Virus record (IMG/VR): IMGVR_UViG_3300025162_000016
Coordinates: 304,759-368,758 of that record
Length of the DNA: 64,000 nt
Strand: one strand, 5' to 3'
Shown here one piece after another: positions 8,726-46,117 of the stretch. Numbering within the stretch: position 1 is the stretch's first letter; every line of letters starts with the position of its first letter. The position numbers were made by a program, and so were the translations under genes. The notes under the pieces are model-generated. The model made no database searches and had not been told where the DNA came from. It saw nothing but the letters and a program-made list of their open reading frames with translations.

Positions 8726-8730
8726 GAATT

Positions 8731-25567: not shown

Positions 25568-25731
25568 CCAGTTCTAATAAAATAAACAGTTGTGCGTTGA
25601 TGAATAGAAATATTCCAGCACGGAGCTTATAGTCCCGAGTGTTTTGAAAACCTAAATTTAGTAAGAATAAATTTTAATAGAACAGGTAACTATATGGTGA
25701 AGTGCTGGAACAGACCAGTTACTATATCACC
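25568..25731 (+). ncRNA. Putative scaffold RNA copy A (internally shortened) fused to one CRISPR repeat (25696-25731)
   Basis: TTGACA/TATAGT promoter at 25536-25563; sequence shared with the 45.6, 56.8 and 63.7 kb copies. Confidence 0.6.
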
Positions 25732-25945
25732 TACCAATAATGGGAGTAATCGTAGTGGAAATCAATCGAAGCAAAAAGTGGTGGGAAGAAATGCTTTTGA
25801 AATTCGTCAAGATATTATAGAAAACGCTATAGAAATCATGCGGATGTCCAATCCGAAATCTTCGTTGAATATAGAAGATATGACCGACGACATATTAAAA
25901 ATATCATCAAAATTATATGATTTTGTTGAAAATAAATACCGGTAA
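25694..25945 (+). CDS. Small phage protein whose N-terminus is now encoded by a CRISPR repeat
   Basis: NAFEIRQDII..IL....KLYDFVENK resembles a small T4-like phage protein family. Confidence 0.5.
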   Translation: MVKCWNRPVTISPTNNGSNRSGNQSKQKVVGRNAFEIRQDIIENAIEIMRMSNPKSSLNIEDMTDDILKISSKLYDFVENKYR

Positions 25946-25950
25946 AATAT

Positions 25951-26583
25951 ATGAATTTAAGTTTAACAAATATTATACGGGATAATCCCGATTTAACTAA
26001 AAGATTAGAAGAAGGAACAAAAGAAGTTCGAAAAAGTAAAACTAATTTAGTTCAGGCGGCAAACAATTTCAACAATAAATATACCGATGAGATAGAAGAA
26101 GGAACTCGGCGGCGGCAAATACTTTTGGAAAATGGTAAGGAGGTTGGTAAAACCGAGGAAGAAGTTCTAGGAACATGTGGCGGATTTATTCCTTCGGTTA
26201 GAACTCCTATAATGAATTTTCTGTTTTTTATGATGAGAGATGGAAATCGTTCGGATTGGGTGGGTATTCAAAAAGATCTTAATGAGCAATATGGGCATAT
26301 AGATACAAATTTAGAAGAAGTAGTTTCAGAAAAAGAATTGGATCAGATATATGGGCAATTGATACATGATGATGCGCAATATAAGAATGTAAACGAACCG
26401 GAAGAAATGGACCGATTCATTTATGGAGATATGTCACATGATTTATTTATTAAGATAAAAAAATTAAAAGCTCTATCCCGAAGTGATAATCAAAACGAAG
26501 CGTTTTTAGCATATCAAATATGCATGCGATTATGTCGAAAGTTTGGATTAGAAATAGATAAAATTCCTTGTAACATAAAATAA
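25951..26583 (+). CDS. DUF2786-like domain protein
   Basis: C-terminal KIKKLKALSRSDNQNEA..A....L..KFGL. Confidence 0.7.
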   Translation: MNLSLTNIIRDNPDLTKRLEEGTKEVRKSKTNLVQAANNFNNKYTDEIEEGTRRRQILLENGKEVGKTEEEVLGTCGGFIPSVRTPIMNFLFFMMRDGNRSDWVGIQKDLNEQYGHIDTNLEEVVSEKELDQIYGQLIHDDAQYKNVNEPEEMDRFIYGDMSHDLFIKIKKLKALSRSDNQNEAFLAYQICMRLCRKFGLEIDKIPCNIK

Positions 26584-26594
26584 GTTTTTTTATA

Positions 26595-26814
26595 ATTTTT
26601 GGATGTCTGATATGGATATGAGACTTTTATGTTAATTTGCGAGCGGTTAGGTGGTGTCAAATATGCCGTAGCCGCTCGCAACTTGTAACTCACTGATAAT
26701 GTGGAACTTACGAAATATGATATTTGATGTTGACAAATCGAGGATAATAGAATACACTACCGCTCGCAAATTGATACACAGTTCTTTGACAATACGATAG
26801 TTGCGAGAGACACA
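26595..26814 (+). promoter_or_regulatory. CRISPR leader 1
   Basis: TTGCGAGCGG..CCGCTCGCAA motifs, TTGACA/TAGAAT promoter; near-identical to leader 2. Confidence 0.85.
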
Positions 26815-27352
26815 GGTGAAGTGCTGGAACAGACCAGTTACTATATCACCGGTTGAACTCTGTCATATCTATGTCCACGTTAATCAGGTGAAGTGCTGGA
26901 ACAGACCAGTTACTATATCACCGATCTCTTCCGATGTTTGCTCAAGAGAAGCTTGTTTGGGTGAAGTGCTGGAACAGACCAGTTACTATATCACCTAGGG
27001 TTGCTATAAATGTAACAACCAAACTAGCAGATGGTGAAGTGCTGGAACAGACCAGTTACTATATCACCCAGTACTGGAGTACGGTTAAACCGGACACTAT
27101 ACCCGAGGTGAAGTGCTGGAACAGACCAGTTACTATATCACCAATAAACACTGTTCATCCGTTTCCGTTTCCGGTTTCGTTTGAAGGGTGAAGGTGAAGT
27201 GCTGGAACAGACCAGTTACTATATCACCCGAAAATGGAATATCTCTGCTATAGTTATGTTTGTAAGGTGAAGTGCTGGAACAGACCAGTTACTATAACAC
27301 CATCCTTGGACCAACCATCCAACCATCCAAACAGACCAGTTACTATATCACC
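26815..27352 (+). CRISPR. CRISPR array 1: 7 full repeats plus 1 partial
   Basis: Repeats start at 26815, 26887, 26960, 27033, 27107, 27193, 27266; spacers 36-38 nt (one 50 nt); degenerate distal end. Confidence 0.97.
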
Positions 27353-28057
27353 CTATATCATCCTAAGAAAAGTTATAAATCTTGGAGATATATTTGAAAG
27401 GGTATATATTCCATCTTTAAATAAAGGGTCATCAAACAATCTCAGTTGTGGATTATCTTCCATGGCGGCATTAATATCTATTTTATAAAGAGAAAATTCT
27501 TTGAGTGTATTATTTAATTCAAAAAATCTATTTGCAATTAATTCTGCTTCGTCTTCCGTTCTAGTGAAATATATTCTTTCGGGATGATAACTTATTTTAC
27601 TTAAACTTTTTGGGACCAATCCTATTTTTCGTATTTTATTATCATTGATGGAAGGGGTTGCATGATATAAAACCGAAAATTCCATATCAGTTAATTCCGG
27701 ATCAAATTTTGCTTCGGCTTGAATTGCTATTAATATGTTTAACAATGGGCTATTATTTTTGAAATCATTTTTATCAAATTTTTTCCATTTCATATTTTCT
27801 TTGTTTAATAAACCGGCGGAAATGTACCATCCTAAATTATTAATTAATTTCAATAAGTTATCCAGTTCTTTTTCGGAAGGCGGTTTAATAAAAGAAATGG
27901 TAATAATGTTTCCATTTTTAGGAACTATTTTTATTTTTTCAGTCGAAATTGCCCATCGATTAATCATATCATTGAATTTTGTTTTTGAAACCGAATAGAT
28001 TAATCCTTCGTATAATAAATGATCTCGGATTAGGTGGTTTAGCTTAATCATCTGCAT
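27353..28057 (-). CDS. Putative ADP-ribosyltransferase-fold (Tpt1/KptA-like) protein
   Basis: LYHATP..N...I.KIGLVPK...RIYFT...LYKID...YT..NISP. Confidence 0.6.
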   Translation of the reverse strand: MQMIKLNHLIRDHLLYEGLIYSVSKTKFNDMINRWAISTEKIKIVPKNGNIITISFIKPPSEKELDNLLKLINNLGWYISAGLLNKENMKWKKFDKNDFKNNSPLLNILIAIQAEAKFDPELTDMEFSVLYHATPSINDNKIRKIGLVPKSLSKISYHPERIYFTRTEDEAELIANRFFELNNTLKEFSLYKIDINAAMEDNPQLRLFDDPLFKDGIYTLSNISPRFITFLRMI

Positions 28058-28090
28058 ATATATATATGCCGGTTAAAATAAAACGTCTAC

Positions 28091-28305
28091 AATTTTTGGA
28101 TGTCTGATATGAGACTTTTATGTTAATTTGCGAGCGGTTAGGTGGTGTCAAATATACCGTAGCCGCTCGCAACTTGTAACTCACTGATAATGTGGAACTT
28201 ACGAAATATGATATTTGATGTTGACAAACCGGGGATAATAGAATACACTACCGCTCGCAAATTGATACATAGTTCTTTGATAATACGTTACTTACGAGGG
28301 ATACA
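28091..28305 (+). promoter_or_regulatory. CRISPR leader 2
   Basis: Duplicate of leader 1. Confidence 0.85.
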
Positions 28306-29152
28306 GGTGAAGTGCTGGAACAGACCAGTTACTATATCACCCAATGATCCAACCGCAAACTTTATAAACTGTTGTGTTGGGTGAAGTGCTGGAACAGACC
28401 AGTTACTATATCACCAATATTACTACGTCGTATTTATATATCGAATGATAATGTTGGTGAAGTGCTGGAACAGACCAGTTACTATATCACCCAAGTCTAT
28501 CCATGCAACCTAATACATATCGTTGTGAGGTGAAGTGCTGGAACAGACCAGTTACTATATCACCGGAGAGAGATAAACCTCTACATGGTATGGTTCGGCC
28601 AGTGTGGTGAAGTGCTGGAACAGACCAGTTACTATATCACCTTCCCATATTCTTCGGAGTTACTCGAATTATCCGAGGTGAAGTGCTGGAACAGACCAGT
28701 TACTATATCACCTGTATGTGGTAACTTTTGTTCCTATAGCATCAACAAGGTGAAGTGCTGGAACAGACCAGTTACTATATCACCGTCAACAGTTGACATA
28801 CCTTGAATTCCCGGCGCTGTTGGTGAAGTGCTGGAACAGACCAGTTACTATATCACCTAATGATCCAACCGCAAACTTTATAAACTGTTGTGTTGGGTGA
28901 AGTGCTGGAACAGACCAGTTACTATATCACCAATATTACTACGTCGTATTTATATATCGAATGATAATGTTGGTGAAGTGCTGGAACAGACCAGTTACTA
29001 TATCACCTAGCATACTGGTATGATAGGATCTAAGAAGTAATCTTGGTGAAGTGCTGGAACAGACCAGTTACTATATCACCGACCATCGAGGGGATAACCG
29101 ACACGATTGACCTTACGGCGAATTACTGGAACAGACCAGTCACTATATCGCC
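28306..29152 (+). CRISPR. CRISPR array 2: 12 repeats, 11 spacers
   Basis: 36-bp repeats, 35-41-nt spacers; terminal variant GGCGAATTACTGGAACAGACCAGTCACTATATCGCC. Confidence 0.98.
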
Positions 29153-29179
29153 GCACCTTATAAAATATACGAAAAAAAT

Positions 29180-29389
29180 ATGAAAAAGAAATCTACAAAA
29201 AAAGTTTCAACATTACCCACCGCAGCGGAGGTTTTGAATATTGAAGGAATATATCTTCCTTTAGAAACCGCCAATGTATTATATGCATATTTTCATGCAT
29301 TTTTAGCAAAAGGGTTTACTCAAGAACAATCATTTAAACTCACGGAAAGAATAGCCGGATTTTATTTTAGGTCATCGCCTCTATCCTAA
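29180..29389 (+). CDS. Hypothetical protein
   Basis: KGFTQEQSF motif. Confidence 0.55.
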   Translation: MKKKSTKKVSTLPTAAEVLNIEGIYLPLETANVLYAYFHAFLAKGFTQEQSFKLTERIAGFYFRSSPLS

Positions 29390-29425
29390 CCAAATAGGCT
29401 AGAGTAATATCATTCTCCAAAAATT

Positions 29426-29626
29426 ATGAACATGCATGTACCAGAAGAAATTAGATTGAAATATCCACAGATGGAGTTTCGTGGAAAACAACGGAAGTTG
29501 CATAATCGTACCATGATTGATGCGGAAAATCATCAGACCGGGATGAGTTTCTACTATTCTTTTGAGGAAGATTTCTTCTGGTTCAAAAATTGTGAAATTC
29601 CCGATTGGTTCATAAAAAAAGAATAA
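29426..29626 (+). CDS. Hypothetical protein
   Basis: Operon order. Confidence 0.6.
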   Translation: MNMHVPEEIRLKYPQMEFRGKQRKLHNRTMIDAENHQTGMSFYYSFEEDFFWFKNCEIPDWFIKKE

Positions 29627-29629
29627 AAT

Positions 29630-29932: not shown

Positions 29933-30159
29933 CTGTAAAACAATTAATTGAAAAATTAGGTGAGTATGATCCTGAGATGCCGGTTATGAGTAATGGATAT
30001 GAGGGTGGTTTGAATGATATTGATTCATTTGAAAAACGTGATGTGGTGCTTAATTATCACGAAGCATGGTATTATGGTAAACACGAAAGCGTTGATGGGA
30101 TTCATGGGGAAGGTGATGCTTTGAAAAACACTACGGTTAAAGCATTGATCATCGCATAA
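29929..30159 (+). CDS. Hypothetical protein
   Basis: MTVKQLIEKL..YDPEMPV...GYEGG; ATGA overlap. Confidence 0.7.
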   Translation: MTVKQLIEKLGEYDPEMPVMSNGYEGGLNDIDSFEKRDVVLNYHEAWYYGKHESVDGIHGEGDALKNTTVKALIIA

Positions 30160-30162
30160 AAT

Positions 30163-32161: not shown

Positions 32162-32364
32162 AACAACTAAGGAAATTAAAACTAAACTTCCTAAAACTAA
32201 AGTAGTCAACTATACAGTTGATCCTGAACAGGGGTCTATGTTCTTGGCATACGCTGCCCCAAAAGAATACGCCGTTAAATCCATTGATCGTAAAGGAAAA
32301 AAAGCGACGGTCACATATATTATATAAGCACGTTGAATTCTGAGTTCGTGACCGCTAGAATTAC

Positions 32365-34814
32365 ATGAATAATAAATTAATTAATGATCAAATTTATTTA
32401 CAAGTTGAGGATCAAATTAGATCACAAGTGCTGTCACAAGTTGAGTTACAAGTTTGGTCACAAGTCTATTCACAAGTCTATTCACAAATTCGGTCACAAG
32501 TTAGTTCACAAGTCTGGTCACTAGTTAAGTCACAAGTTGAGTCACCGGTTTGGTCACAAGTTGAGTCACAAGTGCGTCAACACGTTAGAAATGAGCTAAG
32601 ATCAAATGAGCATTAAATTAATTATGGATCAAGTTTGGTCGCAAGTTAGGCATCAAATCGAGTCACAAATTTGGGATCAAGTCTGGTCACAAGTTCAGTT
32701 ACAAGTCTATTCACAAGTCTATTTGCAAGTTGCGTTACAAGTTCTGAATAAAGTTAGGTCACAAGTTGCGGATCAATTGCGGTCACAATTAGAATCAAAT
32801 AAATTATAAAGTAATGCGAGGGACAACATAAAAATGGATTTTCCGGATCAAGTAATATTACAAGAGATGGGTAAAATAATGGGACGAGTTGAGTCACAAA
32901 TTGCGTCACAAGTTAGGTCACAAGTTTCGTCACAAGTTGCGAACCAAATTCAGTCACAGATGATGTCACAAATTCGGAATCAAATAGATAAATAGTGATG
33001 TCTCAATTACAGTTACAAGTTCGGACTCAGGTAAGGCATCAACTTGAAAGGTTTCTAATGTATCCGATGGTGGTACAAACTGGAAGTTTAATATCTCAAG
33101 AAGTCAACAACCAAATAGAATCCCAAGTTGGGCGTAAAATATGGGAAACCGTGGAGTTGAACATAGCATATACAATGGAATTCCAAGTTAAAGAACAACT
33201 AGAATTACATGAATAATACATTAATTAATGATCAAGTCTGGTCACAAGTCTATTCACAAGTTTGGCAACAAGTTCGGAATCAAGTTAGTTCACAAGTCTA
33301 TTCACAAGTTGATTCACAAGTCTGTTCACAAGTTTGGGATCAAGCTGGGTCACAAGTGCGGTCACAAATTTGGGATCAAGTAGGGCAACAAATTAGAAAT
33401 GAGCTAAGATCAAATGAGTATTAAATTAATTAATGATCAAGTCACGTCACAAGTTCAGTCACAAATTTGGGATCGAGTTTGGGATCAAGTGATGTCCCAA
33501 GTTTCGTCACAAGTTAGCTCAGAAGTTTGGAAACAAGTCTGGTCACAAGTTGAGTCAGAAGTGGCAGAACAACTCTGGTCACAAGTCAAGGATCCAGTCT
33601 GGTCACAAGTTCGGTCACAACTAGAATTATATGAATAATAAATTAATTAATGATCAAATTTATTCACAAGTTTCGGTACAAGTTGAGGATCAAGTTTGGG
33701 CACAAGTGCTATCACCAGTTCAGTCACGAGTTTCGTCACAACTGATGTCACAAGTTGAGTCACAAGTTGTGGCACAAGTTTGGTATAAATTAATTAATGA
33801 TCAAATTTATTCACAAATTAGATCACAAGTCTATTCACAAGTTGAGTTACAAGTTGAGTTACAAGTGCGGTCACAAGTCTGGTCACAAGTTGATTCAGAA
33901 GTGCGGTCACAAGTTCGGGATCAAGTTAAGTTACAAGTTGCATCACAAGTTAGGTCACAAGTTGGGGATCAAGTTGGGGATCAAGTTGGGGATCAAGTGA
34001 TGTCCCAAGTTTCGTCACAAGTTAGCTCAGAAGTTTGGAAACAAGTCTGGTCACAAGTTGAGTCACAAGTCTGGTCACAAGTTCAATTAATTAATGATCA
34101 AATTTATTTACAAGTTGAGTCACAAGTCTGGTCACAAGTTAATTCACAAATTCGGTCACAAGTTAGTAATCAAGTTAGGTCACACGTTGCGGATCAATTG
34201 CGGTCACAACTAGAATTACATGAATAATAAATTAATTAATGATCAAATTTATTTACAAGTTGAGGATCAAATTAGATCACAAGTGCTGTCACAAGTTGAG
34301 TCACAAGTCTGGTCACAAGTTCGGCAAGTTGAAGCACAAGTTCGGAAACAAGTTGAGTCACAAGTTTATTCACAAGTCTATTCACAAGTGCTGTCACAAG
34401 TTGAGTCACAAGCCAATTCACAAGTCTGGTCACAAGTTGATTCAGAAGTGCGGGCACAAGTTCGGGATCAAGTTAAGTTACAAGTTGCATCACAAGTTAG
34501 GTCACAAGTTGGGGATCAAGCTGGGGATCAAGTTAGGCAACAAATTATAAATGAACTAAGGTCGCATGAATAATAAATTAATTAATGATCAAATTTATTT
34601 ACAAGTTGAGGATCAAATTAGATCACAAGTGCTGTCACGAGTTGAGAACCAAGTCTGGTCACAAGTTAAGGATCAAGTGGGGCAACAAGTCTGGTCACAA
34701 GTTCGGTTACAAGTTGCGTTACAAGTTAGGGATCAAGTTAGATCACAAGTCTATTCACAAATTCGGTCACAAGTTAGGTTACAAATTTTGTCACAAGTTC
34801 AATCACAATTATAA
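32365..34814 (+). repeat. Block 1 of Gln/Val/Ser-rich (QVxS)n short ORFs (~9 ORFs)
   Basis: 12-bp unit TCACAAGTNNNN; most ORFs start MNNKLINDQ/MSIKLI and end LELHE/LRSNE. Confidence 0.9.
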
Positions 34815-34862
34815 GTGTTGACTTTCTATAAATCCTCTGATAGTATTGGAGGAGTGGAATAA

Positions 34863-35867
34863 ATGAATGTTCAGGATCAAATACATAAAAATGTGTGGTG
34901 TCCGTACGCCGAGGTTTCGGAAAACGTGCCACTTATTATCACATATCATATCGCATTTATATGTGATCAAATAGATAATTCAGTAAGATTTCAAGTAGCT
35001 AACCCACTTGAACTACAAATAAATAATCAAATTAAAAAAGAAACAACAGAAAATATGAATGAAATAGCTAAAGAAATGAATACCGATACGAATGATAAAA
35101 TCCGGGATCAAATTGTAGCCAATATATTGTCTCAACTAAAATCAAAAGTGACGGATGATGAAACCGAAATCGGGAATCAAGTAAAACTCGAAGTGGCAGA
35201 AGAAATCAAATCACATATTATGGCTCAAATGACATCAGAAGACAACAAATTCGTATATCCCTACTTCGATTGCCAGTTCTGGGCATCTTGGTTCAGTTTC
35301 TATGAATTTATGAAGACTGAACTAGGTATTGAATTCCCGAATGAAAAGGAATATAATATCCTCAAAGATTGTCAGAAATATGGCATGGTATTTCCTTTGG
35401 ATGACCTTTGTGTCGTATGTCAGCCGCCGACAATTATTAAAAAGAATAATTCAGGGTTGCACTGTGAGAATGGTCCGGCACTCAGTTATAACGGAGACAA
35501 CGAGATATTTGCATTGAACGGGGTGGTAATGCCTAAAGAATATGTATTAACTCCTGCTAGAGATATTACCGCAGAGACGGTTATGAAGGAGACCAATGTA
35601 GAGATTCGCCGGGAATTACTTAGGAAGGTAGGTATTGAGCGGCTAATGAATGATTTGCCACATAAACTGTTGGAGACCCGTGGTAACTACGAATTGTATA
35701 GTATTGATCTAAGTAATGAAATTAAAGATGCACGTTATCTGAAAATGCAGAACCCATCCATCGGAGTTTTTCATTTGGAGGGACTAGCTCCTGGTATTAA
35801 TACAATTGAGGAAGCTCTTAAATGGAGGAATAATAATTTGTTTGTTGACGCCGAAATTCTAACGTAA
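34863..35867 (+). CDS. DUF6745-type protein
   Basis: W.SFYEF, LHCENGPAL.Y....FALNGV, ETNVEIRRE....GIER, L.M.NPS; own promoter at 34818-34846. Confidence 0.75.
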   Translation: MNVQDQIHKNVWCPYAEVSENVPLIITYHIAFICDQIDNSVRFQVANPLELQINNQIKKETTENMNEIAKEMNTDTNDKIRDQIVANILSQLKSKVTDDETEIGNQVKLEVAEEIKSHIMAQMTSEDNKFVYPYFDCQFWASWFSFYEFMKTELGIEFPNEKEYNILKDCQKYGMVFPLDDLCVVCQPPTIIKKNNSGLHCENGPALSYNGDNEIFALNGVVMPKEYVLTPARDITAETVMKETNVEIRRELLRKVGIERLMNDLPHKLLETRGNYELYSIDLSNEIKDARYLKMQNPSIGVFHLEGLAPGINTIEEALKWRNNNLFVDAEILT

Positions 35868-35885
35868 ACCTAATGTTAAAACCTA

Positions 35886-38800
35886 ATGTTAAAGCTAATG
35901 ACACAAGTTGAGTCACAAGTTAGCTCACAAGTTTGGGATCAAGTTATGGATCAAGTTCGGTCACAAGTCTGGTCACAAGTTGCGTCACAAGTCTATTCAC
36001 AAGTTTGGAAGCAAGTTATGGATCAAGTTCGGTCACAAGTTGAGATTCAAGTGGGGCAACACGTTATAAATGAACTGGGGTCGAATGTATAATAAATTAA
36101 TTGATGATCAAGTTCGGTCACAAGTTAGGGATCGAGTTTGGAAACAAGTTGAGTTACAAGTTTCAACTCAAGTGTCGTCACAAGTTAGTTCAGAAGTGAG
36201 GTCGCAAATTTGGGATCAAGTTTGGAAACAAGTCTATTCACAAGTTCAGTCACACGTCTGGGATCAAGTCGAAGCACAAGTTCGGAATCAACTTCGGTTA
36301 CAACTAGAATTACATGAATGATATAATTAGATATCAAATTAGGGATCGAGTTAGGTCACAAGTTGTGGATCAAGTCTGGTCACAAGTTTCGGCACAAGTT
36401 GATTCAGAAGTGAGGTCGCAAGTTTGGGATCAAGTGATGTTACAAGTTCAGTCACAAGTTGCGAACCAAATTCGGTCACAACTAGAATCACATGAACATT
36501 AATAAATTAATTAATGATCAAGTCTGTTTACAAGTTTGGGATCGAGTTAGGTCGCAAGTTTCGTCACAAGTTACGTTACAAGTCACGTCACAAGTTGAGG
36601 ATCAAGTGATGTCCCAAGTTCAGTCACAAGTTCAGTCACAAGTCTATTCACAAGTCACGTCACAAGTTCAGTCACAAGTTTGGGATCGAATTAGGTCACA
36701 AGTTCAGTCACGAGTTGCGTCACAAGTCTGGTCACAAGTTGAGTTACAAGTCACGTCACAAGTTGTGTTACAAGTTCGGAATCAAGTTAAATCACAAGTG
36801 CGGTCACAACTAGAATTACATGAATGATATAATTAAATATCAAATTAGGGATCGAGTTAGGTCACAAGTTGCGGATCAAGTTCGTTCACAAGTCTGGTCA
36901 CAAGTTAGGTCACAAGTTCTGAATAAAGTTAGGTCACACGTTGCGGCACAAGTTGGGGTAAAAGTTGGGGTGAAAGTTGAGTCACAAATTAGGGATCAAG
37001 TTATGAATCAAGTTAGGTCACAAGTTAGTGATCAAGTTGCGACACAAGTGCGGACACAAGTGCAGAATCAAGTGCGGTCACAACTAGAATTACATGAATG
37101 ATATAATTAAAAACCAAATTCTTGATCAAGTTAGGTCACAAGTTGAGAACAAAGTCTGGTCACAAGTTAGGGATCAAGCTTGGGCACAAGTCACGTCACA
37201 AGTTAGGGATCAAGTCTGGTCACAAGTTGGGTCACAAGTTGGGGCACAAGTTCGGTCACAAGTTCGGGTACAAGTAGCTGAACAAGTTGGGTCACAAGTT
37301 GGGTCACAAGTTGGGGCACAAGTTCGGTCACAAGTTCGGGTACAAGTAGCTGAACAAGTTGGGTCACAACTAGAATTACATGAATGATATAATTAAATAT
37401 CAAATTTTTGATCGAGTTAGGTTACAAGTGCAGGATCAAGTTTGGTCACAAGTTGACGTTCAAATTTGGGATCAAATCTGGTTACAGGTAATGTCACAAG
37501 TGTTGTTACAAGTTGAGTTACAAGTTCGGAATCAAGTAATTAATCAAGTTCAGTTACAAGTGATGACTCCATTGATAAAACGAATGGATGAACATGTGGA
37601 TGATCAAGTTTGGACCCACGTTTGGAATCAAATTGGGTTACAAGTGGCACAGCAAATTCAATCCCAAGTCAGAAATCAAGTTAGGTCACAACTCGAATCA
37701 CATGAATAATCTAATTAGATACCAAATTAGATCACAAGTTGATTCACAAGTGCGGTCACAAGTTATAACACTCTGGTCCCAAGTTACGTCACAAGTGCGG
37801 CCACAAGTCTGTTCACAAGTTTTGGATCAAGTTGCGTCACAAGTTCGGTCACAAGTGTGGTCACAAGTTAGTGATCAAGTTGCGACACAAGTTGGGGCAC
37901 AAGTTCGGAATCAAGTAATGTTACAACTCGAATCACATGAATAATCTACTTAAAAACCAAATTTGGGATCAAGTTGAGGCACAAGTTGAGTTGCAAGTGG
38001 GATATCAAATTTGGGATCAAGTTAGGTCACGAGTTGAGTCACTAATGATGTTACAAGTTCGGAAACAAGTTGAGTCACAAGTTTATTCACAAATTCGGTC
38101 ACAAGTTAGGGATCAAGTGGGGCAACAAGTTCAGTCACAAGTCTGGTCACAAGTTATGTCACAACTAGAATCACATGAATGATATAATAAGGAATAAAAT
38201 TGGGAAACAAGTTCTGGTACAAGTGATGTCCCAAGTTGATGAACAAGTTAGTTCACAAGTTAGGGATCAAGTCTGGTCACAAGTTAAGTCACAAGTCTAT
38301 TCACAAGTCTATTCACAAGTTGAGGATCAAGTTAGTTCACAAGTCTATTTGCAAGTTGAGTTACAAGTCTATTCACAAGTCACGTCACAAGTTAGGTCAC
38401 AAGTTATGTCACAAGTCTGTTCACAAGTTAGGGATAAAGTAATGTTACAACTCGAATCACATGAATAATCTACTTAAAAACCAAATTTGGGATCAAGTTG
38501 AGGCACAAGTTTGGAATCGAGTTAGGTCACAAGTTCGGAATAAAGTTAAGTTACAAGTTGCATCACAAGTCTGGTCACAAGTTCGGAATCAAGTAATGTT
38601 ACAAGTCTGGGATCAAGTGCGGTCACACGTTTCGTCACAACTCGAATCACATGAATAATCTACTTAAAAACCAAATTTGGGATCAAGTATGGTCGCAAGT
38701 CACGTCACAAGTTCTGTTACCTGTGATGTCCCAAGTTGATGAACAGGTTGGGGTTCAAATCTGGTCACAAGCTAAGTCACAAGTTGAGTCGGAAGTGGCA

Positions 38801-41800
38801 GAACAAGTCTGGTCACAAGTTCGGAATCAAGTAATGTTACAACTCGAATCACATGAATAATCTACTTAAAAACCAAATTTGGGATCAAGTTGAGGCACAA
38901 GTTGAGTTGCAAGTGGGGGATCAAATTTGGGATCGAGTTAGGTCACGAGTTGAGTCACTAATGATGTTACAAATTTGGGATCGAGTTAGGTCACGAGTTG
39001 AGAACCAAGTCTGGTCGCAAGTTAAGGATCAAGTGGGGCAACAAGTTATAAATGAACTAAGGTCGCATGAATAATAAATTAATTAATGATCAAGTTTGGA
39101 ATCAAGTTAGGCAACAAGTCTATTCACAAGTTGAGTTACAAGTTGAGTTACAAGTGCGGTCACAAGTTGGGCAACAAGTTAGGGATCAAGTCTTGATACA
39201 AATCCGGTTACAAATTTGGTCACAGATTCAGTTACAAGTTCGGTCACAAGTCGAGTCAGAAGTAGCAAAACAAGTGTGGTCACAAATTAGAAATCACGTT
39301 ATGTCACAATTAGAATCACATGAATGATATAATAACGAATAAAATCGGGAAACAAGTTCAGTCACAAGTTTGGCAACAAGTTGAGTACCCAATGTTGAAA
39401 CACCTCGTATCACAAGTTACGTCAAGAGGTCGGGATAAAGTTAGGCAACAAGTTAGTAATCAAGTCTGGTCACAAATTAAGTCACAGGTCAATTCACAAG
39501 TTCAGTCACGAGTTGCGTCACAAGTCTGGTCACAAGTCCGGTTACAAGTTTCGTCACAAGTCTGGTTACAAATTTGGCAACAAGTTATAAATGAACTAAT
39601 ATCGCATGAATAATATAATAACGAATAAAATCGGGAAACAAGTTCAGTCACAAGTTAGTTCACAAGTCTGGTCACAACTAGAATTACATGAATAATCAAA
39701 TTAAAGATCAAATTTGGGGTCGAGTTTTGTCACAAGTTTCAGCACAACTTCACCTAATTGATGCTCAAGTCTGGTCACAAGTTAGGTCACAAGTTGAGAA
39801 CCAAGTCTGGTCACAAGTTTCGTCACAAGTTATGTTAAAAGTTGAGTCACAAGTTGAGTCACAAGTTATAAATGAACTGGGGTCGCATGAATAATAAATT
39901 AATTAATGATCAAGTCTGGTCACAAGACTATTCACACATCTATTCACAAGTTCCGTTACGAGTTTGGGTTCAAGTCTGGTCACAAGTCCGGGATCAAGTT
40001 CGGAAACAAGTCTGGCAAGTTGAGGATCAAGTTACGTCACAAGTTTCGTCACAAGTTTGGGATCGAGTCTGGTCACAAGTTCAGTCACAAGCCAATTCAC
40101 AAGTTGAGGCTCAAGTTCGTTCACAAGTCTGGTCACAAGTTATGTCACAAGTTACGTCACAAGTTGATGAACAAGTCTGGTCACAAGTTCGGGATCAAGT
40201 GATGTTACAAGTTCAGTCACGAGTTGCGTCACAAATCTGGTCACAAGTCTGGTCACCAGTCGGGGCACAAGTTTCGTCACAAGTTAGCTCACAAGTTAGC
40301 TCACAAGTTTGGCAACAAGTTGAACAAGTTAGCTCACAAGTTCCGTCACAAATTAGGTCGCACGTTGAGTTACAAGTTAGGAACCGAGTTATAAATGAAC
40401 TAAGATCGCATGAATAATAAATTAATTAATGAACAAGTCTGGTCACAAACTTGGGATCAAGTTGCGGCACAAGTTGTGGATCAAGTTAACTCACAAGTTA
40501 TGTTAAAAGTTGAGTCGGAAGTGGCAGAACAAGTCTGGTCACAAGTTCGGAATCAAATTATGTCACAAGTCTATTCACAAGTTGCGTTACAAGTGCAGGA
40601 TCAAGTTAGTTCACAAGTTAGGAATCAAGTTTGGGATCGAGTAATGTTACAAGTTCGGAATAAAGTTAAGTCACAAGTTCAGTCGCAAGTTTGGGATCGA
40701 GTAATGTTACAAGTTGCGTCACAAGTTATAAATGAACTGGGATCGAATGTATAATAAATTAATTAATGATCAAGTCTGGTTACAAGTTTGGGATCGAGTT
40801 AGGTCGCAAGTTAGTTCACAAATTTGGGATCGAGTCTGGTCACAAGTTAAGTCACAAGTTGCGGCACAAGTTGATTCACAAGTGCGGTCACAAGTAAATA
40901 GTCAAGTTATAGCACAAATTAGAAATAAGCTAAGATCAAATGAGTATTAAATTAATTGATGATCAAGTCTGGTCACAAGTTCAACCAGAAATTTGGGATC
41001 GAGTTAAATCGCCAATGGTGAAACATCTAGTATCACAAGTCACATTACAAGTCACGTTACAAGTTGAGTCACAAGTTATGTCACAAGTTTGGCAACAAAT
41101 TTGGCAACAAGTTTCGTCACAAGTTCGGTCACAACTAGAATCACATGAATAATACATTAATTAATGATCAAGTTTGGCAACAAGTTAGCTCACAAGTTTG
41201 GCAACAAGTTGAACAAGTTAGCTCACAAGTTGCGTCACAGGTTTCGTCACAAGTCAAGGATCCAGTCTGGTCACAAGTTCGGTCACAACTAGAATTATAT
41301 GAATAATAAATTAATTAATGATCACTTTTGGGATCAAGTCTGGTCACAGGTGATATCACAAGCTTCGTTACAAATTGAGTTACAAGTTAGCTCACAAGTT
41401 ATATCACAAGTCGGGTCACAAGTTCGGTCACAAGTTTGGAAGCAAGTTCAGTCACAAGTTAGTAATCAAGTTAGGCAACAAATTATAAATGAACTGGGGT
41501 CGAATGTATAATAAATTAATTAATGATCAAGTTTGGAATCAAGTTAGGCAACAAGTCTATTCACAAGTTGATTCACAAGTTGCGGCACAAATAAATAATC
41601 AGATTAAGTCACAAGTTCAGAATCAAGTTGCGTCACAAGTTTGGAAGCAAGTTCAGTCACAAGTTAGTAATCAAGTTATAGCACAAATTAGAAATGAACT
41701 GGGGTCGAATGTATAATAAATTAATTAATGATCAAGTCTATTCACAAGTGCTGTCACAAGTTTGGGAGCAAGTTGCGTCACAAATAAATAATCAGATTAA

Positions 41801-44800
41801 GTCACAAGTTCAGAATCAAGTGATAGCACAAGTCACGTCACAAGTTTGGGATCAAGTTTCAAATCAAGTTTTGGAACGAATTATATCTCAAGTTTCGGAA
41901 CAAGTTTCGGAACAAGTTGAGTTATACGTTTTGGATCAAGTTAGAGCACATGTAGTGAGTAAACTTTGGGTAAGTAAATAATCAAATATATAATAACTTG
42001 TTACGAATTATGAAGGAGAAAATGATATATCAAGTGTCGAGGGACGTGCAGAATCAAGTGCGGGATAAGGTTTGGAATCAAGTTGAGTTACACGTTTTGG
42101 ATCAAATTTCGTCACAAGTCAATTCACAAGTCAATTCACAAGTCTGGTCACAAGTCTGGTCACAAGTCTGGTCACAAGTGGGGGATCAAGTTCGGTCACA
42201 ATTAGAATCACATGAATAATAAATTAGTTAATGATAAAATCTGGTCACAAATTTGGGATCGAATTAGGTCACAAGTTCAGTCACGAGTTAGCTCACAAGT
42301 TAGCTCACAAGTTTGGCAACAAGTTATGAATCGAGTTACGTCACAAGTTAATGATCAAGTCTATTCACAAGTTATGTCACAAATTTGGGATCGAGTCACG
42401 TCACAAGTTGAGGATCAAGTTGCGGCACAAGTTCGGTCACAACTAGAATTACATGAATAATAATAAATTAGTTAATGATCAAGTCTATTCACAAGTTATG
42501 TCACAAGTTGAGTCACAAGTTTCAACTCAAGTGTCGTCACAAGTTGAGTTGGAAGTTGTGTTACAAGTTGCGGTACGAGTTAGTTCACAAGTTAGGAATC
42601 AAGTTTGGGATCGAGTTAGTTCACAAGTTAGGAATCAAGTTTTGGATCGAGTTAGGTCACAAGTTGATTACCCAATGATGAAACACCTCCTATCACAAGT
42701 TACGTCACAAGTTAGGTCACAAGTTAGGTCACAAGTCTATTCACAAGTCCGGTCACAAGTTAGCTCGGAAGTTTGGAAACAAGTTTCGTCACAAATAGCA
42801 GAACAAGTGCGGTCACAATTAGAATTACATGAATGATATAACTAACTATCAAATTTGGGTTCAAGTTAAGTCACAAGTCTGGTCACAAGTTAAGTCACAA
42901 GTTGAGGATCAAGCTTGGGCACAAGTCACGTCACAAGTAGCAGAACAAGTTTGGGATCAAGTCTGGTCACAAGTTCGGAATCAAATCACGTTACAAGTCA
43001 ATTCACAAGTAGCAGAACAAGTAGCAGAACAAGTGCGGTCACAAATATCTTCCAATGGACAATTTATATAATCAAGTTCAGTCACAAGTTGCATCCCACG
43101 TTGATTCCCAAGTCTGGTCACAAGTTTCAACTCAAGTCTCGTCACAAGTTGAATTAGAAGTGAGGTCGCAAGTCTATTCACAAATTGAGGATCAAGTTCG
43201 TTCACAAGTCAATTCACAAGTTGCGTCACAAGTAGCAGAACAAGTGCGGTCACAAATATCTTCCAATGGACAATTTATATAATCAAATTATTGATCAAGT
43301 TGAGTTACACGTTTTGGATCAAGTTTCGTCACAAGTCTGGTCACAAGTCTGGTCACAAGTCTGGTCACAAGTTGATTCAGAAGTGCGGTCACAAGTTCTG
43401 AATAAAGTTAGGTCACAAGTTTCGTCACAAGTTTGGGATCAAGTTTGGTCACAAGTTAGGGATCAAGTGATGTTACAAGTTTCGTCACAAGTTTGGGATC
43501 AAGTGATGTTACAAGTTGCGTTACAAGTTCTGAATAAAGTTAGGTCACAAGTTGCGGATCAATTGCGGCACAATTAGAATCAAATAAATTATAAAGTAAT
43601 GCGAGGGACAACATAAAAATGGATTTTCCGGATCAAGTAATATTACAAGAGATGGGTAAAATAATGGGACGAGTTAGGTCACAAGTTGCGGATCAAGTTC
43701 GGTCACAAGTGAGGACACAAGTTTGGGATCAAGTTTGGAATCGACTTATTAAAGCTGGTGGATCACAAGTTAAATCAGAAATTGAGTCACAAATATCTTC
43801 CAATGAACAATTTATATAAACAAGTTCAGTCACAAGTAGCAGAACAAGTGCGGTCACAAGTTGATTCACAAGTTGCGACACAAGTTCGAATTCAAATCAA
43901 TTCACAAGTTACGTCACAAGTCTATTCACAAGTTGCGGATCAAGTTTCGGAACAAGTCTGGTCACAAGTCTGGTCACAAGTTTCGCCACAAGTCCATTCA
44001 CAAGTATGGTCACAAGTTCGGTTACAAGTTGCGTTACAAGTTTGGGATCAAGTTAGATCACACGTTGCGGCACAAGTCTATTCACAAGTGCTGTCACAAA
44101 TTAGAGATCAAGTTATAAATAAGCTAAGATCACATGAATAATACATTAATTAATTATCAAACCTATTCACAAGTTTGGGATCGAGTGAGGGGACACGTTG
44201 CGGATCAAATAATGTTACAAGTGATGACTCCATTGATAAAACGAATGGATGAACAAGTTGCGTCACAAGTTTCGTCACAAATTTCGTCACAAGTCACGTC
44301 ACAAAATGAATTTGGGTCGCATGAATAATAGATTAATTAAAGACCAAATCGAGTCACAAATCTATTCACAAGTCACGTCACAAGTTAGGGATCAAGTCTG
44401 GTCACAAGTCACGTCACAAGTAGCAGAACAAGTGAGGTCACAAGTCTGTTCACAAGTTCGAATTCAAGTTAGGTCACAAGTTGCGTTACAAGTTGAGTTA
44501 CAAGTTCGGTTACAAGTAAATGAGCAGATTCGGAATCAAGTTGCGGCACAAGTTATAAATGAACTGGGGTCGAATGTATAATAAATTAATTAAAGACCAA
44601 ATCGAGTCACAAGTTTGGCGACAAGTTGAAGCACAAATCGAGTCACAGGTGGTATACCCAATGTTCGGACACCTCGTATCACAAATTGCGTCACAAGTTT
44701 CATCTCAAGTTATGTCACGAGTTGAGCCACAAGTTAGGACACAAGTGAATGAGCATGTTGCGGATCAATTGCGGTCACAATTAGAATTACATGAATAATA

Positions 44801-45196
44801 AATTAGTTAATGATCAAGTCTATTCACAAGTTTCGACTCAAGTTTCGGAACAAGTCTGGTCACACGTTGTGTCACAAGTTTCGTCACAAGTTGATGATCA
44901 AGTTTGGGATCAAGTTAGATCACACGTTGCGGCACAAGTTAGTTCACAAGTTCGGTCACAACTAGAATTACATGAATAATAATCGAATTATTGATCAAGT
45001 TTCGACTCAAGTTTGGTCACAAGTTTGGGATCAAGTTGAGTCACAAGTTAGCTCACAAGTCTGGTCACAAGTTCGGTTACAAGTTGCGTTACAAGTTAGG
45101 AATCAAGTTTGGTCACAAGTTGCGGCACAAGTTAAGGAAAATGTTGAATCACAAATTAGAAGCCACCTCGCCCGCTCTATTTTGTTTGTTGACTAG
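35886..45196 (+). repeat. Block 2 of (QVxS)n short ORFs (~38 ORFs, ~30-180 aa, mostly overlapping)
   Basis: Successive ORFs mostly joined by 8- or 11-nt start/stop overlaps (ATGAATAA, ATGAATGA, ATGTATAA, ATGAGTATTAA). Confidence 0.9.
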
Positions 45197-45248
45197 TTAT
45201 GGGTTTTGTGGTTGACAAATTGAGGTAGTTGGTGTAGACTATTAAAGC

Positions 45249-45449
45249 ATGAGAACTGCTGAAGAAATAATTAAAGAAAATGGATGGGATGAATATAAGA
45301 CAGTGGCGGAAATTAAAGCCATTCAAGCCGATGCGTGGCAAGACGCCATTAAACACGCAATTTCCATAGCTAAAAGATATAGTAAAGATGATTCATGGGG
45401 TCAGGAAAAAATCATAGTGAAAGAACTCGGTAATCTTCTTGAAAAATAA
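45249..45449 (+). CDS. Hypothetical protein
   Basis: ATG just after TTGACA/TAGACT promoter. Confidence 0.6.
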   Translation: MRTAEEIIKENGWDEYKTVAEIKAIQADAWQDAIKHAISIAKRYSKDDSWGQEKIIVKELGNLLEK

Positions 45450-45654
45450 TATGAATACTGATTATGAACAAGGATGGGATGCTTATATGTCCGGCCTATA
45501 TAAAGAGGATTGCCCACACACAAACAACCTCTCACAAGGTGGAGATTGGTTAGATGGTTGGTGGGCGGCACAAATACAATTGAGAGATTCCAATGTAGTA
45601 GCAGAAAAACCAACACTAAAACCAATACCATGTAAGTGCGGTAAAGAATATTAA
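45439..45654 (+). CDS. Hypothetical protein, possibly truncated by the scaffold insertion
   Basis: YEQGWDAY..G....CP...W..GW motif; stop lies inside the scaffold copy. Confidence 0.55.
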   Translation: MKNNMNTDYEQGWDAYMSGLYKEDCPHTNNLSQGGDWLDGWWAAQIQLRDSNVVAEKPTLKPIPCKCGKEY

Positions 45655-45817
45655 TAAACATAGGTTAATTGACTAACAAAAAGATGAGAATAGAAATATT
45701 CCAGCACGGAGCTTATAGTCCCGAGTGTTTTAAAAACCTAAATTTAGTAAGAATAAATTTCAATAGAACAGGTAACTATATGGTGAAGTGCTGGAACAGA
45801 CCAGTTACTATATCACC
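45640..45817 (+). ncRNA. Putative scaffold RNA copy B (5'-truncated) fused to one CRISPR repeat (45782-45817)
   Basis: Near-identical to 63859-64000, followed by an exact 36-bp repeat. Confidence 0.6.
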
Positions 45818-46117
45818 CAAATGAGTTATATAAACACGAAACGGATGAAGAACGAATTATTCGTATGATAAAAGCTAGATCGGCAGAAGATACATATGCT
45901 TATTGTATCATGAGACTTCAAAATTTAGGACGAATTTGAAAATTTAAAAATATGAGACTTAAACGAAATAACGTGCTTTTGACTAGTATTAGTTTCATTT
46001 TGGCGAGTGTGGTATTGTGGATATCGCCGTCCACAAGTTTCAATGTTGAATTTGCGATTTTTGATTTGAAATTAGCATCGATATTGTTTGCGGCATATCT
46101 GTGCATGGATAAAAAAT

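What the first reader, a model, noticed from the sequence alone, without database searches (positions are those of the whole stretch)
25694..45938. Repeat-ended units appear to insert into or beside genes, suggesting mobility
Seen: at 25694 ATG plus the repeat reads in frame into what looks like a genuine small phage gene. At 45640 the scaffold interrupts an ORF after PCKCGK, and a start-less frame (NELYKHETDEERIIRMIK..) resumes after the repeat. At 10012 and 27352 repeats abut stop codons. The truncation point of copy B coincides with an internal GGTGAAG (GGTAAAG in copy B), the same heptamer that begins the repeat. Inference: repeat ends act as integration or recombination ends, so flanking DNA becomes the guide, as in IS200/IS605 omegaRNAs.
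Basis: inference. Interest (0 to 1): 0.6.

Follow-up and report, generated by a model that had tools for sequence, protein, structure and literature searches.

The report
Repeat-ended guide modules replacing phage genes
In a giant phage genome, short modules that end in one copy of the phage's own CRISPR repeat have replaced the front ends of genes that are still intact in sibling strains. The leftover gene sequence therefore sits exactly where a CRISPR guide would start, which may be a way for one phage strain to target its siblings.

Summary
The window belongs to a ~362-kb huge-phage genome. It carries real CRISPR arrays (36-nt repeat; 26815-27352, 28306-29152), about a dozen solitary copies of that repeat, and several TnpB insertion sequences.

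The 'scaffold' is a stand-alone, promoter-bearing copy of the guide-RNA (omegaRNA) scaffold of the phage's IS607-type TnpB. A covariance model built from ten TnpB loci hits all four scaffold copies and nothing else. In copies A and B the scaffold is fused to one CRISPR repeat.

Sibling-strain contigs supply the alternative alleles:
- Unit A (25506-25732) stands where siblings have 709 nt of an intact 316-aa gene.
- Unit B (45457-45817) stands where siblings have 85 nt of an intact 69-aa gene.
- A third, sibling-only solitary repeat replaces window 10857-10913.

In all three the difference ends at the repeat's last base (within one base at A). The allele without the unit reads TTM|CA there.

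These are repeat-ended replacements, not clean transposon insertions: left ends are ragged, target DNA is lost, and there is no duplication. The best reading is recombination at the repeat/spacer boundary. This creates single-repeat guide modules whose flank is the guide against the intact sibling allele. Function is untested and the effector was not found.

The parts
25506..25732 (+). Unit A. It comprises scaffold copy A (to 25693, with a ~135-nt internal deletion relative to C/D), AT, the CRISPR repeat 25696-25731, and one further base. A promoter-like site lies at 25536-25563.
   Evidence: Absent from sibling contigs L108/L137, which have 709 nt of an intact 316-aa gene instead. Homology resumes at 25733. 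Promoter scan: 11/12 match with TG. Model R1 hit at 25557-25698, E 1e-4.
25694..25945 (+). Chimeric 83-aa ORF. ATG plus the repeat give 13 codons. The remaining 70 codons are the 3' remnant of the 316-aa gene. 25732 onward is in the 'spacer position'.
   Evidence: BLASTP 70/70 identical to residues 247-316 of L108:5045-5995. The sibling allele reads GATTC|CACCAAT; the window has T25732 for the first C.
45457..45817 (+). Unit B, the segment absent from siblings. It comprises the body of the RMF-like ORF (45451-45654), 5'-truncated scaffold copy B (45639-45779), AT, and the CRISPR repeat 45782-45817.
   Evidence: Sibling contigs L132-L136 have 85 nt of an intact 69-aa gene here. The left junction follows the shared ATGAAT. 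The right junction is at 45818, the first base after the repeat. Weak RMF hit. R1 hit at 45650-45784, E 1.2e-3.
45818..45939 (+). 3' remnant (39 codons plus stop) of a 69-aa gene, lying in the 'spacer position' after repeat B.
   Evidence: phmmer against 1.8 billion proteins: P0122 (69 aa, 95% identity, residues 31-69), P0123, P0124. The sibling allele reads TATTA|CAAATGAG.
56768..57116 (-). Scaffold copy C: full length, own promoter (57061-57034), not followed by a repeat. The bases after its end (56767-56748) match the antisense strand of the IS607 tnpA gene at 18/20.
   Evidence: (R1 E 5e-5).
63704..63999 (+). Scaffold copy D: full length, 98% identical to C. It continues beyond the window into L001 and is not followed by a repeat.
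26586..27352 (+). CRISPR array 1: a ~230-nt leader, 7 repeats from 26815, and a 5'-truncated terminal repeat at 27330-27352.
   Evidence: The sibling strain has the same leader and repeat but entirely different spacers.
28085..29152 (+). CRISPR array 2: a leader 92% identical to leader 1, and 12 repeats from 28306. The last repeat is a variant with compensatory end changes.
2325..10047 (+). Nine solitary AGTGAAG...CACT-type repeats, starting at 2325, 2414, 5137, 5274, 6432, 6510, 6595, 6977 and 10012.
   Evidence: The end pair G1-C36 is replaced by A1-T36. One of them (2414) lies 6 nt after a promoter that passes the scan.
10857..10913 (+). The window is the 'unit-less' allele of a third site. 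Siblings have a ~88-nt promoter-like piece plus a solitary repeat here.
   Evidence: L137/L138 reverse-complemented: homology resumes at window 10914, directly after the sibling's repeat. The window reads TGTTC|CAATCATT.
47971..49516 (+). IS607-type TnpB element (gene 48243-49493), absent in siblings. Its omegaRNA-like 3' region (49382-49516) ends in TAACTCT.
   Evidence: R1 E 7.5e-20. The sibling empty site differs at guide position 2.
23967..25294 (+). IS605-type TnpB element (gene 24108-25283), absent in siblings, lying 211 nt upstream of unit A. It is a separate event from unit A.
   Evidence: Occupied sites read TTCAT before the left end; empty sites read TTTAT.

Best explanation
The units are single-repeat CRISPR guide modules, not transposons. 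Each consists of a promoter-bearing upstream piece joined to one copy of the phage's own CRISPR repeat. In A and B the upstream piece is a stand-alone copy of the omegaRNA scaffold of the phage's IS607-type TnpB. At the third site it is a different promoter-like piece.

Each unit has replaced the front part of a resident gene. What is left of the gene therefore begins exactly where a spacer would begin.

Proposed origin (inferred): the phage's CRISPR machinery acquired a spacer against its own or a sibling's DNA, next to a TTM motif. The conflict was then resolved by recombination or templated repair between that spacer, in a single-repeat mini-array, and its protospacer. Alternatively, an integrase-type joining occurred at the PAM boundary. 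Either route fuses 'upstream piece + repeat' to the protospacer and deletes the PAM side. It gives an exact right junction and a ragged left one.

Proposed consequence (inferred): the module's transcript is a crRNA-like RNA whose guide is the flank. That guide matches the intact allele of co-circulating sibling strains, where it follows TTM. The module-bearing strain could therefore cut siblings, and the module could spread by repair in a homing-like way.

Shown here: the anatomy, the omegaRNA homology, the alternative alleles, the junction positions, the TTM|CA motif, and the junction-proximal SNPs.

Inferred: every step involving RNA, a nuclease or recombination.
For: - The repeat belongs to real arrays that turn over. 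There are 33-44 distinct spacers, conserved leaders, and a sibling strain with the same leader but different spacers, one of which is the reverse complement of a window spacer.
- Three independent strain-polymorphic sites end at the repeat's 3' end: A within one base (homology resumes at 25733), B exactly (45818), and the sibling-only unit opposite window 10857-10913 exactly.
- The downstream frames are true gene remnants.
- All three unit-less alleles read TTM|CA at the junction. That 5-mer has frequency 0.0033 in the window, so two further sites matching the first has probability ~1e-5.
- The left extents of the units differ (227, 361 and ~113 nt), as do the target losses (709, 85 and 57 nt).
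- Strains differ by ~0.5-1.2% overall. Yet the only SNP within 45 nt of junction A is the first base after the repeat. The TnpB sites show the same pattern in the TAM or at guide position 2. This fits nuclease pressure on unit-less alleles.
- Scaffolds A and C carry the best sigma-70-like promoter of their regions.
- Both alleles occur in the same sample series (BUCK21-1, ERZ27313xxx), so co-infection is plausible.
Against: - No CRISPR effector or adaptation genes were found in the ~75 kb examined. Only ordinary IS-type TnpBs are present.
- No protospacer was found for any array spacer, so the PAM is not independently known.
- Copy B has lost the scaffold promoter.
- The donor mini-arrays implied by the model were not observed.
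- The third site lies in a paralogous, recombining region.
- The TTM|CA motif was defined after the fact, from three sites.
- There is no expression data.
Confidence: 0.45

Rival explanations
1. Neutral recombination debris. Dispersed repeats, scaffolds and paralogous intergenic modules recombine in a highly recombinogenic phage. The units are scars with no RNA-level function, and the junction regularities reflect local sequence bias.
For: - Copy A has an internal deletion between short direct repeats, and copy B is truncated without its promoter.
- The 8.7-11 kb region contains recombining paralogous modules.
- Covariation in the repeat does not exceed shuffles.
Against: - Three independent right junctions fall at the repeat's last base, with no homology there.
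- The unit-less alleles share TTM|CA.
- At site A the SNP lies exactly at the junction.
- The repeat keeps its hairpin through compensatory end changes.
Confidence: 0.2
2. The repeat hairpin is the right end of a transposable unit, moved by a transposase of the IS200/IS605/IS607 kind. The unit inserts after a short target motif (TTM), so the flank becomes the guide.
For: - The repeat folds as a strong hairpin ending at its last base (-13 kcal/mol).
- The genome carries active IS605- and IS607-type elements, including an IS607 transposase.
- In unit-less alleles a short motif precedes the junction, as a TAM would.
Against: - There is no conserved left end: the left boundaries differ in all units.
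- The target motif and 57-709 nt upstream of it are lost rather than kept to the left of the unit.
- There is no duplication.
- The bona fide TnpB elements of this genome end in GTTGAC or TAACTCT, not in the repeat.
Confidence: 0.15
3. Scaffolds A and B are omegaRNA genes whose guide is the CRISPR repeat itself. By homology the omegaRNA ends at ...GGTAACTAT and AT+repeat follows. IS607-type TnpB would then be directed at DNA carrying this repeat, for example the arrays or solitary repeats of rival strains.
For: - Model R1 aligns its 3' end (UAACUGU) to GGUAACUAU in all four copies.
- The right end of the resident TnpB element is confirmed at that motif by a sibling empty site.
- Copy C's equivalent position matches another mobile-element gene, IS607 tnpA, at 18/20.
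Against: - The A/B identity runs through all 36 nt of the repeat and stops exactly at its end. That is longer than a TnpB guide and matches a CRISPR boundary.
- At site A the repeat arrived together with the scaffold, because no repeat is present in the sibling allele.
- The third repeat-ended unit has no scaffold at all.
Confidence: 0.1
4. The solitary repeats, including those of A and B, are RNA decoys of the Racr kind. They would soak up a Cas protein of the host or of a rival phage. Their positions next to gene remnants would then be incidental.
For: Racrs are solitary CRISPR repeats in phage genomes (PMC10651486). Here there are at least 12 solitary repeats, all on the transcribed strand, several behind TATA-like boxes.
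Against: - The repeat is that of the phage's own arrays.
- No bacterial or archaeal species representative carries an array with its 18-nt core; there were only single chance hits.
- The decoy idea does not explain the junction regularities.
Confidence: 0.1

Closest known systems
TnpB/omegaRNA (OMEGA) elements of IS200/IS605 and IS607, and their guide-RNA-driven homing (PMC8612924; bioRxiv 10.1101/2023.03.14.532601; IS607 reRNAs: PMC11061315)
   Same: - The scaffold is homologous to the omegaRNA region of the phage's IS607-type TnpB.
- The DNA beside the element supplies the guide.
- Occupied and empty alleles co-exist.
- Empty alleles differ in the TAM or seed.
   Different: - The units carry no tnpB or tnpA.
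- They end in a CRISPR repeat rather than at the omegaRNA end.
- They have no defined left end.
- They delete target DNA on arrival.
- Rfam (including RAGATH-18) does not recognise the scaffold.
Virus-borne CRISPR arrays, mini-arrays and solitary repeat units, including RNA anti-CRISPRs (PMC10651486; the huge-phage arrays and virus mini-arrays are recalled from the literature)
   Same: - Orphan arrays and solitary repeats occur in a huge phage.
- Spacers presumably target competitors.
- Some solitary repeats sit behind promoter-like sequences.
   Different: - Here the solitary repeats mark strain-polymorphic replacements of gene 5' parts.
- The 'spacer' is the continuing gene itself.
- Two of the repeats are fused to an omegaRNA scaffold.
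Transposon-CRISPR intermediates (TranC) and the omegaRNA-to-tracrRNA/crRNA split in the origin of type V systems (PMC10691335; TranC structure 9jfo appears among the PDB hits)
   Same: TnpB-sized nucleases, an omegaRNA-like scaffold and CRISPR repeats occur together in one genome, and a scaffold directly abuts a repeat.
   Different: - No TnpB is linked to an array.
- Relatives of the IS607-type TnpB in other viral contigs have no arrays.
- The candidate 9-nt anti-repeat is not better than chance by duplex energy.
Recombination between a CRISPR spacer and its protospacer in a phage genome (Varble et al. 2019, Nat Microbiol; recalled from memory, and its title appears in reference lists found)
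   Same: It gives a junction 'repeat | protospacer continuing into the target genome', which is the junction seen here.
   Different: The known case involves a host CRISPR locus and an infecting phage and leads to transduction. Here both partners would be phage DNA, and the product is a stable allele.

Membership tests
CRISPR array | Several near-identical direct repeats separated by unique spacers of similar length | tested here: met
   7+1 and 12 repeats of 36 nt, with spacers of 35-50 nt. There are 33-44 distinct spacers across the genome's arrays.
CRISPR array | Conserved leader with a promoter upstream of the first repeat | tested here: met
   The leaders are 92% identical and carry TTGACA-17-TACACT. 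The same leader sits at a third array in L001.
CRISPR array | Spacer turnover between strains | tested here: met
   Sibling L108 has the same leader and repeat, but all of its spacers differ.
CRISPR-Cas locus | Adjacent cas effector and adaptation genes | tested here: not met
   No Cas1, Cas2 or large Cas12 was found in the window plus L001. Array-adjacent ORFs have no PADLOC, Pfam or PHROG hit. The rest of the 362-kb genome was not examined.
IS200/IS605/IS607 TnpB-omegaRNA element (for the scaffold-repeat units) | OmegaRNA-type scaffold homologous to that at the 3' end of a tnpB gene | tested here: met
   Model R1, built from 10 TnpB loci, hits all four scaffold copies (E 5e-5 to 1.3e-3). The next hit has E>1.
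IS200/IS605/IS607 TnpB-omegaRNA element (for the scaffold-repeat units) | tnpB (and tnpA) inside the element | tested here: not met
   There is no TnpB or transposase ORF within 25506-25732 or 45457-45817.
IS200/IS605/IS607 TnpB-omegaRNA element (for the scaffold-repeat units) | Defined left and right ends; simple insertion that keeps the target motif and loses no target DNA | tested here: not met
   Left ends are ragged, and 709, 85 and 57 nt of target are replaced. By contrast, the genome's true TnpB elements give clean empty sites.
IS200/IS605/IS607 TnpB-omegaRNA element (for the scaffold-repeat units) | Guide equals the DNA directly after the omegaRNA end | tested here: inconclusive
   In A and B the bases after the aligned omegaRNA end are AT plus the CRISPR repeat. 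In C and D they are unrelated flanks. No RNA data exist.
RNA anti-CRISPR (Racr) / solitary repeat unit | Solitary CRISPR-type repeat in a virus genome, transcribed on its own | tested here: inconclusive
   The repeats are clearly solitary. Only one of the nine early-region repeats has a scan-passing promoter directly upstream. No expression data exist.
RNA anti-CRISPR (Racr) / solitary repeat unit | Mimics the repeat of the host's CRISPR system | tested here: not met
   The 18-nt core gives only single chance hits in 185,579 species genomes. The host is unknown, so this is not final.
Type V-F / TranC-like system with tracrRNA | Compact TnpB-like effector linked to the array | tested here: not met
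   All TnpB copies near arrays are IS elements, absent from siblings that keep the arrays. Relatives elsewhere lack arrays.
Type V-F / TranC-like system with tracrRNA | Anti-repeat in the scaffold pairing with the repeat | tested here: inconclusive
   A 9-nt complement (TTCCAGCAC to GTGCTGGAA) lies in the conserved part of all copies. However, the duplex energy (-22 kcal/mol) is within one sd of shuffled repeats.

The most novel reading that the evidence does not exclude
The repeat-ended modules are a CRISPR-based drive between co-infecting phage strains. A crRNA made of the solitary repeat plus the adjoining gene remnant cuts the intact allele of sibling genomes next to TTM, and repair copies the module in. 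The direct fusion of a stand-alone TnpB omegaRNA scaffold to a CRISPR repeat would then be a living intermediate between transposon guide RNAs and CRISPR RNAs.
Probability: 0.25. Interest if true: 0.9.

Novelty: new variant of a known kind. Interest (0 to 1): 0.7.

Why it matters
If the modules work as proposed, three things follow.
- CRISPR repeats would be shown acting as the mobile end of self-propagating guide genes inside a virus population. That joins two mechanisms so far seen separately: TnpB-style homing and CRISPR targeting.
- There would be a natural example of an omegaRNA scaffold physically joined to a CRISPR repeat. This makes the debated transposon-to-CRISPR transition testable on a real system.
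- The fate of self- or sibling-targeting spacers in phage-borne arrays would have a concrete answer.

Even if the modules are only scars, the exact repeat-end junctions at a shared TTM|CA site record a DNA joining reaction at the repeat/spacer boundary. That reaction is worth identifying.

Tried and rejected
- **Host mimicry.** The 18-nt repeat core was scanned in 185,579 species genomes and in JGI metagenome contigs. Only chance single hits appeared, apart from this phage itself.
- **Scaffold elsewhere.** The scaffold 21-mer was scanned in IMG/VR. Only this phage has it.
- **Rfam.** Only a tmRNA and a tRNA pass the gathering threshold. No family, RAGATH-18 included, matches the TnpB 3' end or the scaffold even at E<=10.
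- **tracrRNA idea.** The repeat/scaffold duplex energy is no better than for shuffled repeats.
- **Repeat covariation.** Compensatory end changes exist but do not exceed shuffles.
- **Scaffold versus tnpB loci by BLAST.** This gave only a marginal 17-22-nt motif (E 0.09). The covariance model was needed.
- **Protospacers.** No spacer matches any locus fetched. Three spacer cores scanned in IMG/VR found only the array itself, so no independent PAM is available.
- **TnpB as array effector.** All three TnpB subfamilies behave as ordinary insertion sequences, so none can be called the array's effector.
- **Window-type contigs for B and the early region.** They show no variation. Sibling alleles were reached only through the remnant's homologue P0122 and a sibling-specific protein.
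- **IS607 element in L001.** No empty allele was found.
- **RMF-like ORF.** It has no homologues and no second copy in the sequences held.
- **Leader/scaffold 11-mer.** The 11-mer TAGGTGGTGTC shared by the leader and the scaffold hairpin loops could be chance and was not pursued.
Full report
**What the window is.** The window has 30-45% G+C and almost all of its genes lie on the + strand. It carries a tmRNA (20136-20529), a tRNA, an intein-bearing protease and many small ORFs. It is identical to part of IMGVR_UViG_3300025162_000016 / Ga0209083_1000006, a 368,758-bp viral contig. That contig's last ~7.1 kb repeats its first 7.1 kb, so the window's end continues into locus L001.

**The repeat is a CRISPR repeat.** The 36-nt unit GGTGAAGTGCTGGAACAGACCAGTTACTATATCACC forms two arrays in the window.
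- The arrays lie at 26815-27352 and 28306-29152. Each sits behind a ~230-nt leader; the two leaders are 92% identical and carry a sigma-70-like promoter.
- At least two more arrays lie elsewhere in the genome.
- There are 33-44 distinct spacers.
- A sibling strain (L108) has the same leader and repeat at array 1, but every spacer differs. One of its spacers is the reverse complement, offset by 2 nt, of a window spacer. The arrays are therefore in active use.
- The repeat folds into a hairpin closed by its first and last bases (-13 kcal/mol). Variants keep that closure through paired changes, G1-C36 to A1-T36 and T3-A34 to C3-G34. With such closely related copies this does not exceed shuffled controls.
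- The repeat core occurs 29 times in the window against 0 expected. Eleven of these are solitary: nine AGTGAAG...CACT-type copies between 2.3 and 10 kb, plus the two copies of the finding.

**What the 'scaffold' is.** There are four copies.
- C (57116-56768, minus strand) and D (63704-63999) are full length and 98% identical.
- A (25506-25693) has a ~135-nt internal deletion.
- B (45639-45779) lacks the 5' 200 nt and starts at GGTAAAG, where C and D read GGTGAAG.
- A and C carry TTGACA-16-TG-TATAGT, the best promoter-like site in their regions.

The window and L001 also hold several TnpB genes.
- The subfamily represented by 48243-49493 and L001:5292-6536 is IS607-type. In L001 it overlaps an upstream serine-recombinase gene that passes NCBI's IS607 transposase model.
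- Ten members of this subfamily from IMG/VR share the same 3' architecture. It runs in this order: a coding motif, a stem-loop GGAGYTTANAGTCCC with covarying flanks, a variable hairpin, and TAACTGT.
- A covariance model built from these ten loci found, in 75 kb on both strands, only the two tnpB 3' ends (E 1e-20) and all four scaffold copies (E 5e-5 to 1.3e-3). The next hit had E>1.
- The model's 3' end aligns to the point (...GGTAACTAT) where the four copies stop being alike.
- A sibling empty site confirms that the resident element really ends at that motif (47971-49516).

The scaffold is therefore a stand-alone, promoter-driven omegaRNA-like gene. Rfam does not know it.

**The alternative alleles.** Exact-protein look-ups retrieved contigs of sibling strains, 98.8-99.5% identical in collinear blocks, from the same sample series as window-type contigs.

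- *Site A.* Siblings L108 and L137 lack 25506-25732. In its place they carry 709 nt, the body of an intact 316-aa gene. Homology resumes at 25733. The 83-aa ORF of the finding consists of 13 codons from ATG plus the repeat, followed by the last 70 codons of that gene at 100% identity.
- *Site B.* The start-less frame after the repeat matches the C-terminal 39 residues of 63-76-aa proteins. Sibling contigs L132-L136 carry the intact 69-aa gene directly after the 66-aa gene. Window 45457-45817 replaces 85 nt of it. That segment holds the body of a small RMF-like ORF, truncated scaffold B, AT and the repeat. The left junction follows a shared ATGAAT, and the right junction is the first base after the repeat.
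- *Site 3.* Here the window is the allele without a unit. Siblings L137 and L138 have an ~88-nt promoter-like piece plus an AGTGAAG-type solitary repeat where the window has 10857-10913. Homology again resumes directly after the repeat.

Three independent differences thus end at the repeat's last base (within one base at A). On the other side they start at unrelated places and remove 709, 85 and 57 nt.

**Regularities at the junctions.** The unit-less alleles read GATTC|CACC, TATTA|CAAA and TGTTC|CAAT. All three fit TTM|CA. That 5-mer has frequency 0.0033 in the window, so two further sites matching the first has probability ~1e-5.

At site A the only difference within 45 nt on either side is the first base after the repeat: T in the window, C in the sibling.

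The true TnpB elements show the same pattern.
- Both IS605-type elements (23967-25294 and 17086-19675) follow TTCAT. Two further insertions of the same element, in L105 and L107, also follow TTCAT. Both sibling empty sites read TTTAT.
- The IS607-type empty site differs at guide position 2.

With ~1% divergence, four of five junctions carrying their only nearby SNP in the motif or seed positions is improbable (order 1e-4, my estimate). It is what nuclease pressure on unoccupied alleles would produce.

**Interpretation.** So is the omegaRNA analogy.

The units do not behave as transposons. They have no conserved left end, no nuclease or transposase inside, no duplication, and they lose the target motif together with upstream DNA. 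The genome's real TnpB elements give clean empty sites and end in other sequences.

The simplest process that yields 'upstream piece + repeat | sequence that follows TTM in the other allele' acts at the repeat/spacer boundary. Two candidates fit.
- Recombination or templated break repair between a spacer in a single-repeat mini-array and its protospacer. This reaction is known between host arrays and phages (Varble et al. 2019, recalled from memory).
- An integrase-type joining of a PAM-cut end to the repeat.

Either would remove the PAM side, give an exact right junction, and leave the left side to be settled by whatever short homology is available. At B that homology would be ATGAAT. At A it would be a 64%-similar 28-nt stretch shared with copy C's flank.

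Once formed, the module would produce a repeat-plus-flank RNA matching the intact sibling allele. All steps involving RNA, nuclease and repair are inferred.

**Weaknesses.**
- No CRISPR effector or adaptation gene was found in the ~75 kb examined.
- No protospacer was found, so there is no independent PAM.
- There is no expression evidence.

**A competing structural reading.** By homology the omegaRNA ends two bases before the repeat. Scaffold A/B RNA might therefore use the repeat itself as a TnpB guide. Copy C's corresponding 20 bases match the antisense strand of the IS607 tnpA gene at 18/20, which hints that stand-alone scaffolds can carry meaningful guides.

Against this reading:
- A/B identity runs to the exact end of the 36-nt repeat.
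- The repeat arrived together with the scaffold at site A.
- Site 3 has no scaffold.

**Novelty.** Each component is known: phage-borne arrays, solitary repeats, TnpB elements and their homing. The following were not found in the papers searched:
- omegaRNA scaffolds existing as stand-alone genes and fused to a CRISPR repeat;
- repeat-ended replacement of gene 5' parts at a shared TTM|CA site;
- junction-proximal differences in sibling alleles.

I class the finding as a new variant of a known kind, with a more radical reading (a CRISPR-repeat-ended drive) not excluded.

Noticed in passing
window 32200-45150: About 45 tandem small genes (60-180 aa, mostly overlapping by 8 nt) are built from 12-nt repeats encoding xQVx (for example SQVW/DQVR). 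Their number and order differ between strains (L109 vs L110 vs L132).
   Followed up: partly
window 23964-23966 and 17083-17085; L108 4860-4862 and ~548-550: Four independent insertions of the IS605-type TnpB element follow TTCAT, while both empty sites in the sibling strain read TTTAT. The IS607-type empty site differs at guide position 2. This looks like nuclease-escape alleles of unoccupied sites.
   Followed up: partly
window 56748-56767 (minus strand) vs L001 4823-4842: The 20 bases after scaffold copy C match the antisense strand of the IS607 transposase gene at 18/20 (a 21-nt island at 20/21). There is no similarity beyond that island.
   Followed up: partly
window 26650-26660, 28142-28152, 56968-56978, 63777-63787: The 11-mer TAGGTGGTGTC sits in the loop of a hairpin in both CRISPR leaders and in scaffold copies C and D. 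The stems differ (GCGAGCGG/CCGCTCGC vs GTTGACG/CGTCAAC). A similar TAGGTGTTGT lies at the right end of the IS605-type TnpB elements.
   Followed up: no
window 226-15541: An 18-bp palindrome, AACTCTAACCTTAGAGTT, recurs at least 15 times in intergenic positions. It often lies near terminator-like hairpins of the type TTTCCCnnnnGATTTCACC, and may be an operator or terminator set of the early region.
   Followed up: no
window 2305-2324, 5101-5120, 5238-5257; L137 (reverse complement) ~2515-2535: A conserved TTGCATGTTCTGGAATATG-like piece precedes several solitary repeats. It may be a phage-specific promoter or part of the duplicated module.
   Followed up: no
window 28342-28455 and 28858-28971: Two consecutive spacers of array 2 are duplicated further down the same array, with one base changed. 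This indicates an internal array duplication.
   Followed up: no
window 28713-28748 vs L108 6901-6936: A sibling-strain spacer is the reverse complement, shifted by 2 nt, of a window spacer. Another pair (28785-28821 vs L108 7152-7187) targets diverged versions of one sequence. The two strains therefore sampled the same unknown target repeatedly.
   Followed up: partly
window 21647-23941 and 49771-51870: Two paralogous large ORFs (764 and 699 aa, 83-86% identical at the 5' end) contain arrays of 90-nt (30-aa) tandem repeats. Their length varies between strains (576-699 aa for the second one).
   Followed up: no
window 20136-20529 and 56001-56071: Rfam finds a full-length tmRNA and a tRNA, but ARAGORN reported neither on the same sequence.
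   Followed up: no
window 57639-59357: A papain-like cysteine protease gene is interrupted by an intein with an HNH endonuclease domain.
   Followed up: no
L001 6560-6668: The solitary repeat 95 nt downstream of the IS607-type tnpB in L001 is also preceded by AT, and by ~25 nt resembling the scaffold's last bases (CAATAG...AACTATA). It may be a third, still more truncated scaffold-repeat unit.
   Followed up: partly
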